The notes under the pieces: generated by a model | Database searches by the model: none | What the model was told of the DNA's origin: nothing | Seen by the model: the letters and a program-made list of their open reading frames with translations, nothing else | Translations under genes and position numbers: made by a program | Origin: Mobula hypostoma | Lineage: Eukaryota | Length of the DNA stretch: 64,000 nucleotides | NCBI RefSeq assembly: GCF_963921235.1 | Contig: NC_086122.1 | Span: 27,466,001 to 27,530,000, forward strand | Reading direction: 5' to 3' | In this document: positions 753 to 63,939 of the stretch, piece after piece | Layout: each line of letters opens with the position of its first letter | Position numbering within the stretch: the first letter of the stretch is position 1

Positions 753-1410
753 AACGTGAGAAAGTCTGAAGGTGCTGGAAATCCAAAGCAACGCACACAA
801 AATACTGGAAGAACTCAGCAAGTCAGGCAGCATCTACGGAAATGAACAGATAGTCAATGTTCTGGGCTGAGACCCTTCTTCAGGACTGAGAAGGAAGAGG
901 GAAGATGCCAAAATAAAAAGGGGAGGGAGGGGAAGGAGGCTACCTGGAAGGTGATGAGCGAAGCCAGGTGGGTGGGAGAGGTCAAGGGCTAGAGAAGGAG
1001 AAATCTGACAGGAGAGGAGGGTGGACCATAGGAGAGAGGGAAGGAGGAGGGGCCCAGGATGAAGTAATAGGCAGATGAGAAGATGTAAAAGGTCAGAGTG
1101 GGGAATAGAAGAAGGGAGGGAGGATTTTTTTTTACCAGAAGGAGAAATTGATATTCATGCCATCAGGTTGGAGGCTACCCAAATGGAATATAAGATGTTG
1201 CTCCTCCACCCTGAGGGTGGCCTCATCTTGGCACAAGAGGAGGCCATGGACTGGCAATGTCGGAACAGGAATGGGAATCACAATTAGAATATTTGACCAC
1301 CAGGAATTTCTGCTCTGGCAGATGGAGCAGAGGTGCTCAACAAAGTGGCCCCCCTGTTTATGACGGGTCTCACTAATGCAGAAGAGGCCGCTTTGGGAGT
1401 ACCTGAACAC
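753..1410 (-). mobile_element. Penelope-like element (PLE) 3' fragment: GIY-YIG endonuclease C-terminus plus pseudo-LTR with decayed hammerhead motif
   Basis: ORF 1132-1410(-) GLFCISET...FVEHL...RVEEQHLIFHLGSLQPDGMN matches the PLE GIY-YIG C-terminus. It is followed by a pyrimidine-rich tract and CAGTC-CTGAAGA-AGGGTCTCAGCCC at about 855-889(-). Confidence 0.85.
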
Positions 1411-8861: not shown

Positions 8862-9280
8862 CGTATTGTGGCTATCCCTCGAGGTCGAGGATGATGGTCT
8901 GCATTCTGAAGAAGTGGCCAACAGAGCGAAGACGCCTGTGCGTGTATTTGTTTAACGTGTACTTGATGTTGCACTCCAAGGAGCACACGATACTTCACAA
9001 ATCAACCAACCGATTCCAATGGCATGGAAACCACGACGATTGGAGCTGATGGATTTGTTGCAGCCTTCATCCGCCTTCACAGCCGTTGAGTTTGAAGTAA
9101 CTTCGTCCGCCTGTTCCACAGTTGAGGTCTTGGTTGGATTGTTCTTTGTCAGGGACCTCACCCTCGACCTTACCACCATGGGTGACCCTACCAGGAGCAT
9201 AGCTCCAGACGGCATTGCTCTCGGGATCTCAGGACCACACAAGCTTCTCCACCACGACAAGGTGACAATCCACGGAGAAG
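8862..9280 (-). mobile_element. Short non-autonomous RTE-type (Expander-like 5' UTR) retroposon, family F1
   Basis: 5' end CTTCTCCGTGGATTGTCACCTTGTCGTGGTGGAG...GGTAGGGTCACCCATG resembles RTE/Expander 5' UTRs and aligns with 33290-33442. Confidence 0.7.
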
Positions 9281-19514: not shown

Positions 19515-20830
19515 TACACAAGACATTCTGCAGATGCTGGAAATCTTGAGGAACGCACACAAAGTGCTGGAGGAACTCAACAAGTCAGGCAGCGTCTATG
19601 GAAGGGAATAAGCAGTCGACATTTTGAGACCCATCATCAGAACTGGAAGGAAGCGGGAGAAAGCCAGAATAAATAGAGTAGGTGCGGGAGGTAACAGAGT
19701 GCAAGCCAAGTGAGGAGGAAGGTGGCCGGGTGGTGGGAGAGGGGCGATGAAGCTGGGAGGTGATAGGTGGGAAAGGTAAAGGGCCGAAGAAGAAGGAATC
19801 TGATAGGGGATGAGAGGGGACCACAGGAGAAAAAGAAGGAGGTGAGACACTAGAAGGAGTTGATAGGTGGATGAGGAGAAGAGAAGAGGTAAGAGGGGAG
19901 CCAGAGTGGGGAACGGAAAAAGAAAGGAAGGGAGGTGGTTGAAATTACCCAGAGTTAGAGAAATCAATGTTTATGATGTCAGATTGGAAGCTACCCAGAA
20001 AGAATATGAGGCATTGGTTCAGCAACCTGACAGTGGCCTCACCATGGCAGTAGAGGAGACTTAGAAACATAGAAAACCTACAGCACAATACAGGCTCTTC
20101 GGCCCACAAAGCTATGCCGAACATGTCCTTACCTTAGAAATTACCTAGGGTTACCCATAGCCCTCTATTTTTCTAAGCTCCATGTATCTATCCAGGAGTC
20201 TCTTAAAAGAGCCTATCGTTTCTGCCTTCACCACCATCGCCGGCAGCCCATTCCATGCACTCACCACTGTCTGCGAAAAAAACTTACCCCTGACATCTCC
20301 TCTGTACCTACTTCCAAGCACTTTAAAACTGTGCCCTCTCGTGCTAGCCACTTCAGCCCTGAAAAAAGGCCTCTAACTATCCACACGATCAATGCTTCTT
20401 ATCATCTTGTACATCTCTATCAGGTCACCTCTCATCCTCCGTCGCTCCAAGGAGAAAAAGCCAAGTTCACTCAACCTATTCTCATAAGGCATGCTCCCCA
20501 ATCTCAGCAACGTCCTTGTAAATCTCCTCTGCACCCTTTCTATGGTTTCCACATCCTTCCTGTAGTGAGGCTTGTCGGAAATTCCGTTTGTTGTGGTAGG
20601 TGGAGCGAAGATGGCTCCCACTGATGAAGAGGAGGCCACATTGGGAGCATGGATTGGGATACGTAGATGATCCCGACAGACTTGCCGGTGAGGTGTTACC
20701 TCTCCTGGAAGGCCTGTTTTGGGGCCCTGAATGGTAATGAGGGAGAGGCATAGTGGCAGGTGTAACACTTGTCCGCTTTCAGAGAAAAGAACCAGGAGGG
20801 AGATCAGTGGAGAGGGACAAATAGATTATG
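19515..20830 (-). mobile_element. PLE 3' fragment (GIY-YIG remnants plus pseudo-LTR), interrupted by CR1
   Basis: KCYTC and TIQGPK remnants at about 20700-20770 and LGSFQSD-like sequence near 19990. The pseudo-LTR has CAGTT-CTGATGA...GTCGACTG at about 19613-19645(-). Confidence 0.8.
20062..20570 (-). mobile_element. CR1 LINE 3' end
   Basis: YRKDVETIERVQRRFTR...LERRRMRGDLIEMYK, TRGHSFK...FFSQTVVSAWNGLP, and a TTTCTATG tail. Confidence 0.9.
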
Positions 20831-27657: not shown

Positions 27658-30550
27658 CAACTTTCCCTCTAATTTTTTTTTTAACAGGTGCGTGGACCGA
27701 CCATTGCTGTGAGCAGGAAATTTGTCTCCTTCTTCTTCATGTGCCTTGCGTGTTACACGCTTGGGCGATCATGGCTCTCCACCTCGAACGATCCCTCACA
27801 GCATCAATGATATCTCGTACACTTAGATCTGTTAGTTCTTTCACAGTGTCCATATATTTCTTCTTTTCCTTCCTCTACCGCGTTTCCCAGACATATGGCC
27901 TTGTAAGGCATTCTATTTCTCCCTTTCTGATGACATGGCCCAGTTTCCTCTCATTTAATGTTCTCATTAAAGATCTTTTTCTATGGGCACGTTGGAGTAC
28001 TGTCTCATTAGTTACCCTATCTCTATATGATATTTTCAGCATTCTTCTAAGAAACCACATTTCTGTTGCTTCAAAGTTTCTTTGGCGTTCTGGTGTCATA
28101 GTCCATGTTTTGGAAGCATACACCAAGATTGACCAGATGTAACGTTTTGGTAGCCTAAGCCTTGTTGTCATAGAAATGTGTCTGTTGGTAAAAATGGGTT
28201 TCATATTTTGAAAGTTGGTTTTGGCAATGGCAATTCTTCTTTTTATTTCTACTTTACTTCTAGCATCTTGTGATATAAAGCTACCAAGGTAATTGAAGCT
28301 GGTCGTTTGTTCAATCTCTTGGTTACCAATGTACATTTGGCAGTTGGGAGTATCCTGATGTTCTGATATTAACATACATTTGGTTTTTTTACAGTTGATG
28401 GTTAGACCAAAATCTGTACTTGTTTGTATTACTTTATCTTGGAGGATTTGTAGGTCTTCTGCAGCACTTGCTATTAGGGTGGTATCGTCTGCATATCTTA
28501 TATTGTTGATGTTAACACCTCCAATTTTTATCCCATCTAGGTCTTCTATTTCTCTGAGAATCTTTTCACTGTAGATATTAAATAACTCCGGTGAAGCAAC
28601 ACATCCCTGTCTAACTCTTCTTTGAATTTTAGTTCAACTGCTTATATTATCATCAATTTTTACCGCCGCCGTTTGATTCCATTATAAATTTCGAAGCAGT
28701 TGTTGGTCCCTTCCGTCAATGTTTAGTTTAGGGAGAATTTGAAATAATTTTTCATGTTGCACTTTGTCAAATGCTTTAGTGAAATCAATAAAACATAAAA
28801 AGACATCATTTTGATATTCAATTGCCCTTTCTAAAAGCATTAGTAGTATGAAAATTGCATTCGTAGTTCCTCTATCCTCAATAAACCCATATTACAGTTT
28901 AGAAGTTTCTGGCTTTAACTTGTTTTTAATTCAACTCAGAACAATTCTCAACAAAATCTTTATTATGTAACTCATAAGACTGATAGTTCTATAATTTTTG
29001 CAGTCAATAGTTCCAGGAATTTTTGGCAGAGATATAAATACTGATTTCAAGAGATTGTCAGGCAATACACCAGACTCATATGTGCCATTAAACAGTTCAA
29101 AAAGAATATCTGTGCCCAGATCTTCTAGGGCTTGTATCATTTCCACTGAAATTCCACCAGGTCCAGTGGCTTTACCATGTTTCATGCTTTTCATTGCTTT
29201 AGTTATTCCTTCTCTGGTAATAGGTGGGCCAGAATTAGGGTGTTTAATATCTGAGGGTTCCCCTCTATTATCTTCAAAAAGCTGCTCTATATACTGAATC
29301 CAACTCTCACATATTTTATCTGGATCTGTTAGTATGGATCCATCTGATGATCTTATGCATCCTGTAGGGGAGGTTTTCTTAATTCCAGTAATTTCCTTAA
29401 TTTTCTTGTGCATTTCTTTGCTGTTGTTAATGTGGCCTTCTACTTCATTGCATTTTTGATTCAGCCATTCTTCCTTTGCAATATTACACAACTGTCTGCT
29501 CTGTCTGTCTAGCTCTCTGAATTGCATTTCATTATTCTTCATTATTCTTCACTAACCTTCTTTGTTCCATCAGATCTAGAATCTCTTGGGTTCTCCACCC
29601 CTTGGTGGTGTATTGGATTTCTTGTACTGGGATTATCTCCTCTGCTGATTGCTGTATAGCATATTTAAATCTGTCCCAAATCTGTTGTTTTGCTTTCGTT
29701 AAGGTGTTCTTCTACAGCTATTTTGAATTGTTGCTTAAGTATGCTATCATTTTTAAGTTCTCCCAACATATACTTTCTCTTTTTTCCACGTTTCAGTTTC
29801 TTTAATTTTGTTTTAATGGTAGCTATTACCGGATGGTGATCTGAACCACAGTCTGCTCCTGGGTAGGCTTTAGAATTTGTGATATTATTTCTAAAGCATT
29901 CATTGGTGGTAAAGAAATTTATTTGATTCCTTGTTCTATCTCCAAGGCTAATCCAAGTACACAATCTACGTGGATGGTTTTTATACCAAGTATTGGTGAT
30001 CACTTGGTTGTTTCTGATACACCAATCAGTAAACCTTTCTCCATTTTCATTTTTCTCCCCTAATCCAAAAGGTCCTATGATGTTATCAACCCTTTCCTGT
30101 CCAACTTTGGAGTTAAAATCTCCCATGACTAGTTTTATATCCTGAGATTTACATTGCTCATAAGCACTGTCGAGATCTTCATAAAACTTGTTGATATCTT
30201 CTTCATCCACATCATTTGTTGGCGCATGGGCTTGGACTATGCTAATGTTAAAAGGGTTACCCCTTAATTTAACTAAAAGCAGCCGGTCAGATATCGCCCA
30301 ATATCCCATAAGACATTTTGATACTTGTTTGTTTAAAATAATTCCAACTCCATACATATGCTGTTGACCTCCACAATACATTATCAGAGAACTGTCAGAG
30401 GAAATTTGTACACAGCCTGAAAACTGCACGGCTCTTTAATAAAACATTATATAAAAGAGAATTCCAGCTGCACTACAACAAAGGCTATGTGCGCGGGAGC
30501 ATTTCAGTTACTGCGCGGCCACGTACCCGCTCAGCTTAGTGGCAACAGCG
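27658..30550. mobile_element. Small hAT-like MITE split by the RTE insertion (pieces 27658-27725 and 30399-30550)
   Basis: Degenerate TIRs CAACTTTCCCTCTAA / TTAGTGGCAACAGCG. The two halves meet at the RTE TSD. Confidence 0.5.
27726..30398 (-). mobile_element. 5'-truncated RTE-clade LINE (AP endonuclease plus RT, decayed)
   Basis: EN motifs VMGDFNSKVG and ADCGSDHHPV. RT motifs NYRTISLMS, RQGC, RYADDT, FNYLGS. (GAA)n tail. Perfect 11-bp TSD AGGAAATTTGT at 27715-27725 and 30399-30409. Confidence 0.95.
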
Positions 30551-33049: not shown

Positions 33050-33442
33050 ACCATGACCATTACGCCACTGGCAGTTAGGGCAGCAATGAAGGTCCGCCAT
33101 CTTTGGTGGCATTCCGGCCTTCCTTCATCATGTCTGTAGCTTCCTCTTTGTTTTCACTGCTGTCAATCATGCAAATTCCAGATGGAGACTCAGGAATACA
33201 GTCACACTCAGATGTAGGAGGATTCTTCATTGCTGTTTCTGTAACAATTTTGTTTTAGCCCTGAGCTGAACCCCTGAACCTGGAGGACCGGTGGACCACT
33301 CTTACTCTGGCCTCTACCCTTTGACCTGTTTGGCATGGGCGACCAGAGCGTAAAGCCCCGACTCCAGCCAACATAGCTCTCCGGATCATTGAGGCAGGCA
33401 AGTCTCCAAACCCAATGACAAGATTGTGGTCCAACTGGAGGA
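33050..33442 (-). mobile_element. Non-autonomous bipartite RTE-type retroposon, family F2
   Basis: Expander-like 5' UTR plus RTE 3' end (RWRTFIAAL). A second copy lies at 63570-63925. Confidence 0.75.
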
Positions 33443-34479
33443 CCTCACACGGATTGCAGAGACATAAAGAGGGCTCAGGACAGGCAATCTAACAAAATTA
33501 ATGACAAACAAGACGTGGGTAATTTCAAAGCTGCCATCTAATGCCTGGGTTCAGAGGATGAGAATAAACATTCTTGTGCTTTTCTGACATGATGTGAAAC
33601 CACTGATTATGCTTTATAATCACTGCCTGATATCCACTGTAAACACTAATCCCATCTTGATTGTGGTGTTTCTGATTCCATGGCAGTTATTGGTGACTTC
33701 ATTCAACAGTAGCATATACATTTCAGGCCACTTGCTCATCAGGGTATCAACAACATGCGGCTTGTGACAAAGGAGTTCAGGTGCTGACCCTTGTCCATGG
33801 CAGAATGACTCGTCAAATGCCAGTCTCCCTTTTTTTTTTGGCTTTCGCATTCTGGGTTGGGATACAATCGTCTGAAAAACAGCAGAGAGCCCGCAACAGC
33901 TTTCCTCATAGTGTTCAGGCTCCTCAGAGTTGAACAAGAGTGCCCCCTTCTGTCCCCAGTGTTCGTGTCCACCCTACAACACAGAGCAGGAATATTAAAG
34001 TCAATCTTACAAACCCTAGTGGCTAAATTCCAGGGATCAAATGCCTCGCAGGTTGAAGAAGCCCAGCTGCTTCACACTTTGTCTCATGCATAATAAATGC
34101 TTAAGAATGCTTCTAGAATGTAATTTGTTGTTTGTTAATGTATTTGTGGTAATATTAATTCATGAGTTGTACGTAAGTTGTATGTACTGTGGTGTGGAGG
34201 AACGTTGTTTTGCTTGCAGATGTACATGTGTACGGTGGAATAGCAATAACCTTGAACTTGAACCTGCAGATTATTGGACAATATGAACCCTGCACTTCAA
34301 AACATATGTAATACTGATACATCAAGGCAACTGCACTTACTGGCCTCTCGTTATGAAACAAACTTATAATTATTTTTATCAGGAGAGTTTTGAAAAGCAA
34401 TTTGGGTACAGTAGGCCACTACTCTTGTAATTTAAACAAGCTAACTGATGAAGAGTCCCTGGACTGTACTGCTTTATGT

Positions 34480-63569: not shown

Positions 63570-63925
63570 TTTGGGGCAGCGATGAAGGTCCTCCAACTTT
63601 GTCGGTGTTCAGAGCTTCCTCCATCATGTGGGTTTTCACTCCTGCCAGTCATGCAAGTCCAGGGTGGAGACTCAAGAATACTGTTGCACTCAGATTTAGG
63701 ATTCACTGCTGTTTCCATAACAATTTTGTTTTATCAGTCAGGGTTGTTAGCCCTGAGCTGAACCCCCTAACCTGGAGGACCAGTGGACCACTTTTATTCT
63801 GGCCTCTACCTTTTATTTCTGTTCAGTATGGGTAACCCGATCAAGAGCCAAAGCATAAAGCCTTGAAACATGGCTCTCCAGGTCACTGAGGCATGCAAGC
63901 CTCCAGGTTGTGGTCCTCTCGGAGG
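63570..63925 (-). mobile_element. Non-autonomous bipartite RTE-type retroposon, family F2 (second copy)
   Basis: Homologous to 33050-33442. Confidence 0.75.
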
Positions 63926-63939
63926 CTATGATCATCAAG

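What the first reader, a model, noticed from the sequence alone, without database searches (positions are those of the whole stretch)
9130..9280. Covarying multi-helix RNA structure at the 5' end of two different RTE-type retroposon families (candidate ribozyme or RT-recognition element)
Seen: the minus-strand 5' ends of family F1 (9280 leftwards) and family F2 (33442 leftwards) align in the blocks CTTGTC, GATCCnGAGAGCnATG, GGTCRCCCATG, GGTC and GGGT, while the paired regions differ with compensation. The outer helix is TGGATTGT/ACAATCCA in F1 (9135-9142 and 9265-9272) versus TGGACCAC/GTGGTCCA in F2 (33292-33299 and 33426-33433). The inner helix is TGCCGT/ATGGTG in F1 versus TGTTGGC/GCCAAACA in F2. 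GATC/GGTC can also pair, and RCCC/GGGT could form a pseudoknot. Established: non-LTR elements, including RTEs, can use 5' self-cleaving ribozymes (HDV-like, twister). Inference: I cannot fit this fold to HDV-like, twister or hammerhead by eye, so it may be an uncharacterised structured RNA kept by elements that lost all coding sequence.
Basis: partly seen in the sequence, partly recalled or inferred. Interest (0 to 1): 0.78.

Follow-up and report, generated by a model that had tools for sequence, protein, structure and literature searches.

The report
HDV-like ribozyme heading RTE retroposons
The covarying RNA fold is real, but it is not a new class. It has the strand order and core of a hepatitis-delta-like self-cutting RNA, a device already known to trim the 5' ends of RTE-type jumping genes; cutting itself is untested here.

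Summary
They are far better kept than chance allows. With five full-length RTE LINEs from marine metagenomes added, 93.6% of pair cells are standard pairs, against 32-48% when partners are slid. Nineteen pairs carry double changes, against 8.0 +/- 1.9 in shuffles (0 of 500 reach 19).

The first 7 nt of the element (window 9280-9274, minus strand) pair with 9250-9244. That gives the hepatitis-delta (HDV) strand order P1-P2-P3-L3-P3'-P1'-P4-P2'.

P1 is 7/7 paired in six independent sequences, including an amphioxus RTE, with different letters each time. It starts where similarity between copies starts. A C sits 5 nt before P2' (4 in amphioxus) and is followed by NAA. F1 keeps it at 9148; F2 and F2b have lost it.

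No Rfam model matches. MFE z-scores and a bare one-sequence descriptor are not significant, so the case rests on comparison. Cleavage is untested.

HDV-like ribozymes in RTEs are published, and this scan has already noted them in this ray genome on other DNA. This is a new member of a known kind, notable for its large conserved P4.

The parts
9274..9280 (-). F1 P1 5' strand (CTTCTCC). The predicted cut is 5' of C9280, between 9281 and 9280.
   Evidence: It pairs 7/7 with 9250-9244. The homologous helix is 7/7 in L005, L008, L009, L010 and L011 with different letters. Upstream flanks of all copies are unrelated.
9273..9273 (-). F1 J1/2, a single G
   Evidence: The linker is 1-4 nt in the ray and metagenome copies and a 25-nt hairpin in amphioxus L011.
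9265..9272 (-).
   Evidence: 8/8 paired with 9142-9135. All six pairs counted on A4 show changes on both sides.
9251..9263 (-).
   Evidence: There is a 3-bp stem with a 7-8 nt loop in all intact copies. L3 reads U-U-G-N-(N)-G-U, and the core is near-identical in amphioxus L011.
9244..9250 (-). F1 P1 3' strand (GGAGAAG), directly after P3'
9243..9243 (-). C38, candidate one-pair P1.1 with the invariant G at L3 position 3
   Evidence: C is invariant in all 9 sequences and the L3 G is invariant in the 8 copies that keep L3 (F2b lacks it), so covariation cannot test the pair.
9153..9242 (-). F1 P4 domain.
   Evidence: RNAalifold and pair counts: the closing stem has 4 of 5 pairs with double changes and the inner helix 4 of 5. 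The GGAGC/GCUCC hairpin covaries in L010. The closing stem is imperfect in F1.
9143..9152 (-). F1 J4/2 (CTGACAAAGA), with the candidate catalytic C at 9148
   Evidence: A C sits 5 nt before P2' (4 in L011) and is followed by NAA in F1, L001, L005, L008, L009, L010 and L011. It is replaced by G in F2 and by A in F2b.
9135..9142 (-).
33292..33443 (-). F2: a decayed copy of the same ribozyme at the head of an internally deleted RTE
   Evidence: P2 is 8/8 and P3 is ATC/GGT. L3 has its G changed to A plus a 2-nt insertion, P1 is only 5-6 of 7, and the J4/2 C is changed to G. The 5' UTR downstream matches RTE LINEs.
63784..63927 (-). F2b: a second decayed copy of the F2 family, lacking the P3/L3 stretch
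   Evidence: It is 71% identical to F2. P1 is AGCCTCC/GGAGGCT and P2 is 7/7. P3/L3 is deleted and the J4/2 C is changed to A.

Best explanation
Window 9280-9135 (minus strand) is an HDV-like (delta-type) self-cleaving ribozyme. It forms the first ~146 nt of a non-coding retroposon and was inherited from the 5' UTR of an RTE-clade LINE.

Inferred mechanism: the element is transcribed as part of a longer host transcript. The RNA folds into the nested double pseudoknot:
- P1, 9280-9274 with 9250-9244
- P2, 9272-9265 with 9142-9135
- P3/L3, 9263-9251
- a one-pair P1.1
- a ~90-nt branched P4
- J4/2 with C9148

The RNA then cuts itself just 5' of C9280. This leaves an element RNA with a defined 5'-OH end, which an RTE reverse transcriptase copies into a new site.

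Shown here: the helices, their covariation, the strand, the HDV strand order, the conserved C, and the match between the start of P1 and the start of the element. Inferred: cleavage itself, the role of C9148, and P1.1.

F2 (33443-33292) and F2b (63927-63784) are mutated, probably dead, copies of the same device.
For: (1) P1 is 7/7 paired in F1, L005, L008, L009, L010 and L011, with different sequences. The chance of such a match within the allowed offsets is about 2% per sequence.

(2) P2 is 7-9 bp in all nine sequences, in five different versions.

(3) In every intact copy, P3 (3 bp) and L3 (7-8 nt) directly abut P1'.

(4) Formal counts on A4: 93.6% of cells paired, against 32-48% slid, and 19 doubly changed pairs with 0 of 500 shuffles reaching that.

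(5) G.U outnumbers A.C by 19 to 3, which is sense-strand specific.

(6) Upstream flanks of all eight copies compared are unrelated (28 pairs, none significant). Homology therefore starts at the first base of P1, where HDV-like ribozymes cut (PMC4908430).

(7) A C lies 4-5 nt before P2', followed by NAA, in all seven intact copies.

(8) The module heads full-length RTE LINEs with endonuclease, reverse transcriptase and DUF6451 domains.

(9) Amphioxus L011 keeps the P3/L3 core and P1/P2 but has other peripheral domains, as expected if the core is the functional part.

(10) Literature:
- HDV-like ribozymes occur in RTE and baggins elements (PMC6765202).
- P1 is 6-7 bp, P2 about 7 bp, and the cut is at the first P1 nucleotide (PMC4908430).
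- P3 is 3 bp and P1.1 is 1-2 bp. The active L1Tc ribozyme starts with C1 paired to G37, and its non-autonomous partner NARTc shares the ribozyme (PMC3185411).
Against: - No cleavage data exist.
- No Rfam HDV-type model matches, even in permissive mode.
- P1.1 is at most one invariant G-C pair, so it cannot be tested by covariation.
- A bare HDV-topology descriptor without sequence constraints hits 8 places in the window and 1-10 (mean about 4) in shuffled windows. The fit of one sequence alone proves little.
- MFE z-scores are not significant.
- J1/2 is only 1 nt in F1 and L009, and a one-nucleotide linker gave little activity in a mosquito ribozyme (PMC4908430).
- In F1 the flanking G9281 could extend P1 onto C38 and compete with P1.1, an effect described for L1Tc (PMC3185411).
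- F1's P4 closing stem is imperfect.
- The number of sequences is small (9), and the source organisms of the metagenome contigs are unknown.
Confidence: 0.8

Rival explanations
1. The fold is a structured but non-cleaving 5' UTR element that merely shares the HDV strand order. It might be a binding site for the RTE protein, an internal ribosome entry structure or a stability element. The element's 5' end would then be set by transcription start, not by cleavage.
For: - The P4 domain carries long, nearly invariant single-stranded blocks shared by ray and marine RTEs. That is more conservation than a passive peripheral stem needs.
- HDV-like ribozymes of R2 and L1Tc are reported to also serve in protein binding and translation initiation (PMC6765202).
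- P1.1 is weak, and there is no Rfam hit.
Against: - The core has exactly the catalytic layout: P3/L3 abutting P1', and a C at a fixed distance from P2'.
- Homology starts at the first P1 base in every copy.
- Amphioxus keeps the core while replacing the periphery.
- The extra roles reported for R2 and L1Tc came in addition to cleavage, not in place of it.
Confidence: 0.12
2. It is a new class of self-cleaving ribozyme, unrelated to known classes.
For: No Rfam family matches. L3 (UUGNCGU) and the C1-G37 first pair differ from the HDV virus sequence.
Against: The strand order, helix lengths, P3/L3 geometry and J4/2 C are those of the HDV-like class. That class is known to have very few fixed letters (PMC3774820), and C1-G37 occurs in the active L1Tc ribozyme (PMC3185411).
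Confidence: 0.03
3. The complementary arms are DNA-level features, such as terminal inverted repeats of a small DNA transposon inserted in the RTE head, or they are chance matches.
For: In F2 a 10-nt direct repeat (GGTCCTCCAG) flanks the 150-nt unit, whose ends are inverted repeats. This looks like a target-site duplication.
Against: - L008 and L010 carry the downstream copy of that motif but have quite different 5' strands. The 'duplication' is therefore the P1 strand of one lineage resembling a conserved downstream motif.
- At least five helices covary, with G.U pairs on one strand only.
Confidence: 0.02

Closest known systems
[quoted passage not shown] 2011 as cited in PMC6765202; PMC3774820; PMC3185411)
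   Same: - Nested double pseudoknot in the order P1-P2-P3-P1'-P4-P2'
- 7-bp P1 starting at the element's first base
- 7-9 bp P2 and 3-bp P3
- 7-8 nt L3 with a conserved G
- A C in J4/2
- Position at the 5' terminus of the element
- Shared between autonomous LINEs and non-coding derivatives, as with L1Tc and NARTc
   Different: - L3 reads UUGNCGU.
- The possible P1.1 is a single G-C pair with the G on the L3 side.
- P4 is a ~90-nt branched domain with long, nearly invariant blocks shared between a ray and marine RTEs.
- No match to any Rfam HDV-type model.
- Activity is untested.
L1Tc ribozyme (L1TcRz) of Trypanosoma cruzi (PMC3185411)
   Same: The first pair of P1 is C1-G37 and P1.1 is one pair. 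The cut is at +1 of the element. A non-autonomous partner (NARTc) carries the same ribozyme head. An upstream G can extend P1 and disturb P1.1, as G9281 could in F1.
   Different: L1TcRz is 77 nt with a small P4 and belongs to a different LINE clade. There is no sequence similarity.
Large HDV-like ribozymes with peripheral domains (mosquito drz-Agam-2-1, PMC4908430; R2 of silkmoths, PMC3774820)
   Same: Peripheral domains are added to a small conserved core. The amphioxus relative L011 has a hairpin in J1/2, like the P1.2 of Agam-2.
   Different: In the ray and metagenome copies the added domain sits in P4, not J1/2, and J1/2 is only 1-4 nt.

Membership tests
HDV-like self-cleaving ribozymes | Nested double pseudoknot with strand order P1, P2, P3, P3', P1', P4, P2' | tested here: met
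   The order is found in F1, L005, L008, L009, L010 and L011. P2, P3 and P4 were counted on A4 and P1 was counted by script. L011 was read directly.
HDV-like self-cleaving ribozymes | P1 of 6-7 bp whose first nucleotide is the cleavage site; in retrotransposons this is the first base of the element (PMC4908430, PMC3185411) | tested here: met
   P1 is 7/7 bp in six sequences. Similarity between copies begins at the first P1 base and the flanks are unrelated. Cleavage itself was not tested.
HDV-like self-cleaving ribozymes | 3-bp P3 closing L3, directly followed by the P1 3' strand; a conserved G in L3 (PMC3185411, PMC3774820) | tested here: met
   P3 is 3/3 in F1, L005, L008, L010 and L011, and 2/3 in L009 and L001. 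L3 is 7-8 nt with an invariant G next to its last base, changed to A in the decayed F2.
HDV-like self-cleaving ribozymes | P1.1 of one or two pairs between L3 and the nucleotides just after P1' | tested here: inconclusive
   One G-C pair is possible (L3 position 3 with the C after P1'). The C is invariant in all nine sequences and the G in the eight that keep L3, so there is no covariation to test. A second pair is not available.
HDV-like self-cleaving ribozymes | Catalytic C in J4/2, a few nucleotides before the P2 3' strand | tested here: met
   The C lies 5 nt (4 in L011) before P2', followed by NAA, in F1 (9148), L001, L005, L008, L009, L010 and L011. It is lost in F2 and F2b. Its catalytic role was not tested.
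HDV-like self-cleaving ribozymes | Mg2+-dependent self-cleavage that leaves a 5'-OH product | not testable with these tools
   This needs in vitro transcription and cleavage assays.
Rfam HDV-type families (HDV_ribozyme, CPEB3, drz-Agam and others) | Score at or above the family's gathering threshold | tested here: not met
   No hit was found at gathering or at E up to 10, on the window stretches and on six loci. This is expected, because these models cannot encode the pseudoknots and the ~90-nt P4 insert. The RNA is therefore filed under the structural class, not under any Rfam family.
Hammerhead, twister | Conserved core motifs and a three-way junction or double-pseudoknot layout of those classes | tested here: not met
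   No Rfam hit. The hammerhead CUGANGA and GAAA boxes were not seen by eye in the right context.

The most novel reading that the evidence does not exclude
The ~90-nt branched P4 domain may be more than a folding aid. Its nearly invariant loops (GAGAGCUAUG, CACCCAUG, ACAGGUC) are shared by a ray retroposon and RTE LINEs from marine samples. It could be a second functional module of a distinct RTE-specific subclass of delta ribozymes, for example the binding site of the RTE protein or a cap-independent translation start. That would explain why non-coding derivatives keep it intact.
Probability: 0.25. Interest if true: 0.5.

Novelty: new member of a known kind. Interest (0 to 1): 0.3.

Why it matters
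This removes a candidate new ribozyme class and assigns the structure to a known one, with defined helices, a predicted cut site and a predicted catalytic base. Each of these can be tested in a day of bench work.

It also shows three further things:
- The same ribozyme head is shared by ray retroposons and by full-length RTE LINEs from marine metagenome contigs. The closest named protein relatives of these LINEs come from a marine snail and from amphioxus.
- RTE 5' heads are modular. Some lineages carry this ribozyme and others carry quite different heads.
- Standard Rfam scans miss this variant, so such heads are probably under-annotated in vertebrate genomes.

Tried and rejected
- **Rfam.** Nothing relevant at gathering or permissive thresholds, on the window or on six related loci.
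- **Single-sequence folding.** z-scores are 0.25 and -0.93, so this is uninformative.
Rejected, because nothing like P3/L3 abuts its 3' arm, which is preceded by an A-rich strand. It fits as P2.
- **F2b pairing of CCTGGAGG with the downstream CCTCCAGG, read as P1 or P2.** Rejected as a lineage-specific coincidence. L008 and L010 keep the downstream motif but have unrelated P1 strands.
- **Small DNA transposon with a target-site duplication in F2.** Rejected for the same reason, and because of the covariation.
- **Viral contig scan with the two-block pattern.** Zero hits.
- **Covariance model R1 over the window and 13 loci.** It found no copies beyond the eight it was built from, plus the amphioxus core.
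- **Sequence-free HDV descriptor.** Not specific: 8 hits in the window against 1-10 in shuffles. One hit, at 1242 on the minus strand, lies in an unrelated repeat and is taken as chance.
- **RTE coding remnants in F1, F2 and F2b.** None found by tblastn.
- **Key papers.** Webb 2009, Webb and Luptak 2011 and Ruminski 2011 are not held in the library. Family definitions were therefore taken from PMC4908430, PMC3774820, PMC3185411 and PMC6765202.
- **Formal pair count for P1.** MAFFT did not put the P1 5' strand in register, so P1 was counted by script from explicit coordinates, not with the pair-counting tool.

Full report
**Observation**

- F1 has TGGATTGT (9272-9265) and ACAATCCA (9142-9135).
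- F2 has TGGACCAC (33433-33426) and GTGGTCCA (33299-33292).
- The blocks CTTGTC, GATCCnGAGAGCnATG, GGTCRCCCATG, GGTC and GGGT are shared.

Self-BLAST of the window found one more copy, F2b (63927-63784, minus strand). It is 71% identical to F2 and lacks the CTTGTC stretch.

Rfam gave nothing, at gathering scores or at E up to 10. Minimum-free-energy folds of F1 and F2 are no better than shuffles (z = 0.25 and -0.93). Three copies in one window could not settle anything.

**Relatives from elsewhere**

A two-block pattern found nothing in viral contigs. It found one metagenome contig, L001. L001 carries the module at the head of a full-length RTE-clade LINE with endonuclease, reverse transcriptase and DUF6451 domains.

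The protein has hundreds of close relatives. They are named in a marine snail (85% identity), amphioxus, an eel, Littorina, schistosomes and a bichir. Fetching the DNA around some of them gave:
- four more full-length RTEs headed by the module: L005, L008, L009 and L010;
- an amphioxus RTE (L011) with the same core but different peripheral parts;
- several RTEs with quite different 5' heads: L002, L003, L004, L006, L007 and L012.

F1 matches these LINEs at 73-76% identity over the module only. F2 and F2b also match further into the RTE 5' UTR. None of the three ray copies has a detectable RTE coding remnant.

**The missed helix**

In every intact copy, the 7 nt that directly follow the small CTTGTC hairpin are complementary to the first 7 nt of the element.

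| Copy | P1 5' strand | P1 3' strand |
|---|---|---|
| F1 | CTTCTCC | GGAGAAG |
| L005 | CTATCAC | GTGATAG |
| L008 | CTGTCCT | GGGACAG |
| L009 | CCGTCAC | GTGATGG |
| L010 | CTCCCCG | CGGGGAG |
| L011 (amphioxus) | CCCTCAC | GTGAGGG |
| F2b | AGCCTCC | GGAGGCT |

All are 7/7 paired. The chance of such a match within the allowed offsets is about 2% per sequence.

This is the nested double pseudoknot of the HDV-like ribozymes. In that class P1 is 6-7 bp, P2 about 7 bp, P3 3 bp and P1.1 one or two pairs, and the cut falls at the first nucleotide of P1 (PMC4908430, PMC3185411, PMC3774820).

**Is it more than chance?**

On the 8-sequence alignment A4, with P2, P3 and the P4 stems marked:
- 93.6% of cells are standard pairs, against 32-48% when partners are slid by 1-3 columns.
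- 19 of 36 pairs show changes on both sides, against 8.0 +/- 1.9 in column shuffles (0 of 500 reach the observed value).

G.U cells outnumber A.C cells by 19 to 3, so the fold belongs to the element-sense strand.

The 120-nt flanks upstream of P1 show no significant similarity in any of 28 pairs. Homology therefore begins at the first P1 base, where a delta-type ribozyme would cut.

A caution: a sequence-free HDV descriptor finds 8 places in the window and 1-10 in shuffled windows. The fit of a single sequence is not evidence. The case rests on the comparison.

**Core letters**

- L3 reads U-U-G-N-(N)-G-U in all intact copies. The G next to its end is invariant, and it is an A in the decayed F2.
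- The base after P1' is always C. It could form a one-pair P1.1 with the invariant G at L3 position 3. This cannot be tested by covariation.
- A C lies 5 nt before P2' (4 in amphioxus) and is followed by NAA in F1 (window 9148), L001, L005, L008, L009, L010 and L011. This is the place of the catalytic C in the class. F2 has G there and F2b has A.
- The first P1 pair is C-G in six sequences, not the G.U of the virus. The experimentally active L1Tc ribozyme also starts with C1 paired to G37 (PMC3185411).

**P4**

The ~90-nt P4 domain has these parts:
- a covarying closing stem;
- a stem formed by ATCC with GGGT;
- a GGAGC/GCUCC hairpin;
- a small GGG/CCC hairpin;
- long, nearly invariant unpaired blocks.

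Amphioxus replaces this domain while keeping the core.

**State of the three ray copies**

- F1 keeps all core features. Its weak points are a one-nucleotide J1/2, an imperfect P4 closing stem, and a flanking G (9281) that could extend P1 onto the P1.1 C.
- F2 has lost the L3 G and the J4/2 C, and it has a 2-nt insertion in L3.
- F2b has lost P3/L3 altogether.

F2 and F2b are probably dead copies.

**Comparison with what is known**

[quoted passage not shown] They are thought to free the element RNA from a co-transcript and perhaps to help translation (PMC6765202, PMC3774820, PMC3185411). A non-autonomous partner sharing the ribozyme head is known for L1Tc and NARTc (PMC3185411).

Earlier notes of this scan report HDV-like ribozymes heading non-coding RTE retroposons elsewhere in this same ray genome. 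Those notes gave me the lead to test the delta fit. I could not see their sequences. Their descriptions ('hairpin in L3', 'long J1/2, no P4') differ from the architecture found here, so I cannot say whether they describe the same family.

**Verdict**

The interpretation as an uncharacterised class is not supported. This is a new member of a known kind. Its notable features are the large conserved P4 domain, its spread between a ray and marine RTEs, and the fact that Rfam misses it. Cleavage remains untested.

Noticed in passing
L002:1-330, L004:980-1100, L006:230-560; L007:140-240, L012:790-850: RTE 5' heads are modular. Closely related RTE LINEs (72-82% protein identity to L001) lack the ribozyme module. 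L006 has about four tandem ~75-nt repeats instead, with related units in L002 and the eel L004. L007 and L012 have a different head containing CATGTCGTAAAAGGCGAC. These may be internal promoters or other processing devices.
   Followed up: partly
window 63770-63700 (minus); L003:880-945; L005:375-435; L008:430-500; L010:265-335: All these RTE 5' UTRs, with or without the ribozyme head, share a downstream hairpin (GGGYYAACA-CCC type). It is followed by CUGUAAAAA and GUUACAGAAGCAUCRACGA. F2 carries a deletion in it. Its function is unknown.
   Followed up: no
window 33444-33435 and 33289-33278 (minus); 63906-63899 with 63779-63772: In the F2 family the P1 5' strand resembles the conserved GGTCCTCCAGG motif that follows P2'. 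As a result the P1 3' strand could pair with either one, and the alternative is 8 bp in F2b. It could be a competing fold or just a lineage accident.
   Followed up: partly
window 27743-30420 (minus): A nearly full-length LINE with endonuclease and reverse transcriptase regions. It is only 25-35% identical to the RTE proteins used here, and model R1 finds no copy of the module anywhere near it.
   Followed up: no
L011:5097-5451 (minus): A fragment matching eukaryotic small-subunit rRNA (75.5 bits, model positions 57-388). It lies just downstream of the amphioxus RTE, next to a low-complexity stretch.
   Followed up: no
window 759-1242 and 19521-20058: Another repeat family. It gave a chance hit to the sequence-free HDV descriptor at 1242 (minus strand). 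Similarity between the two copies extends beyond that point, so this is not an element start.
   Followed up: partly
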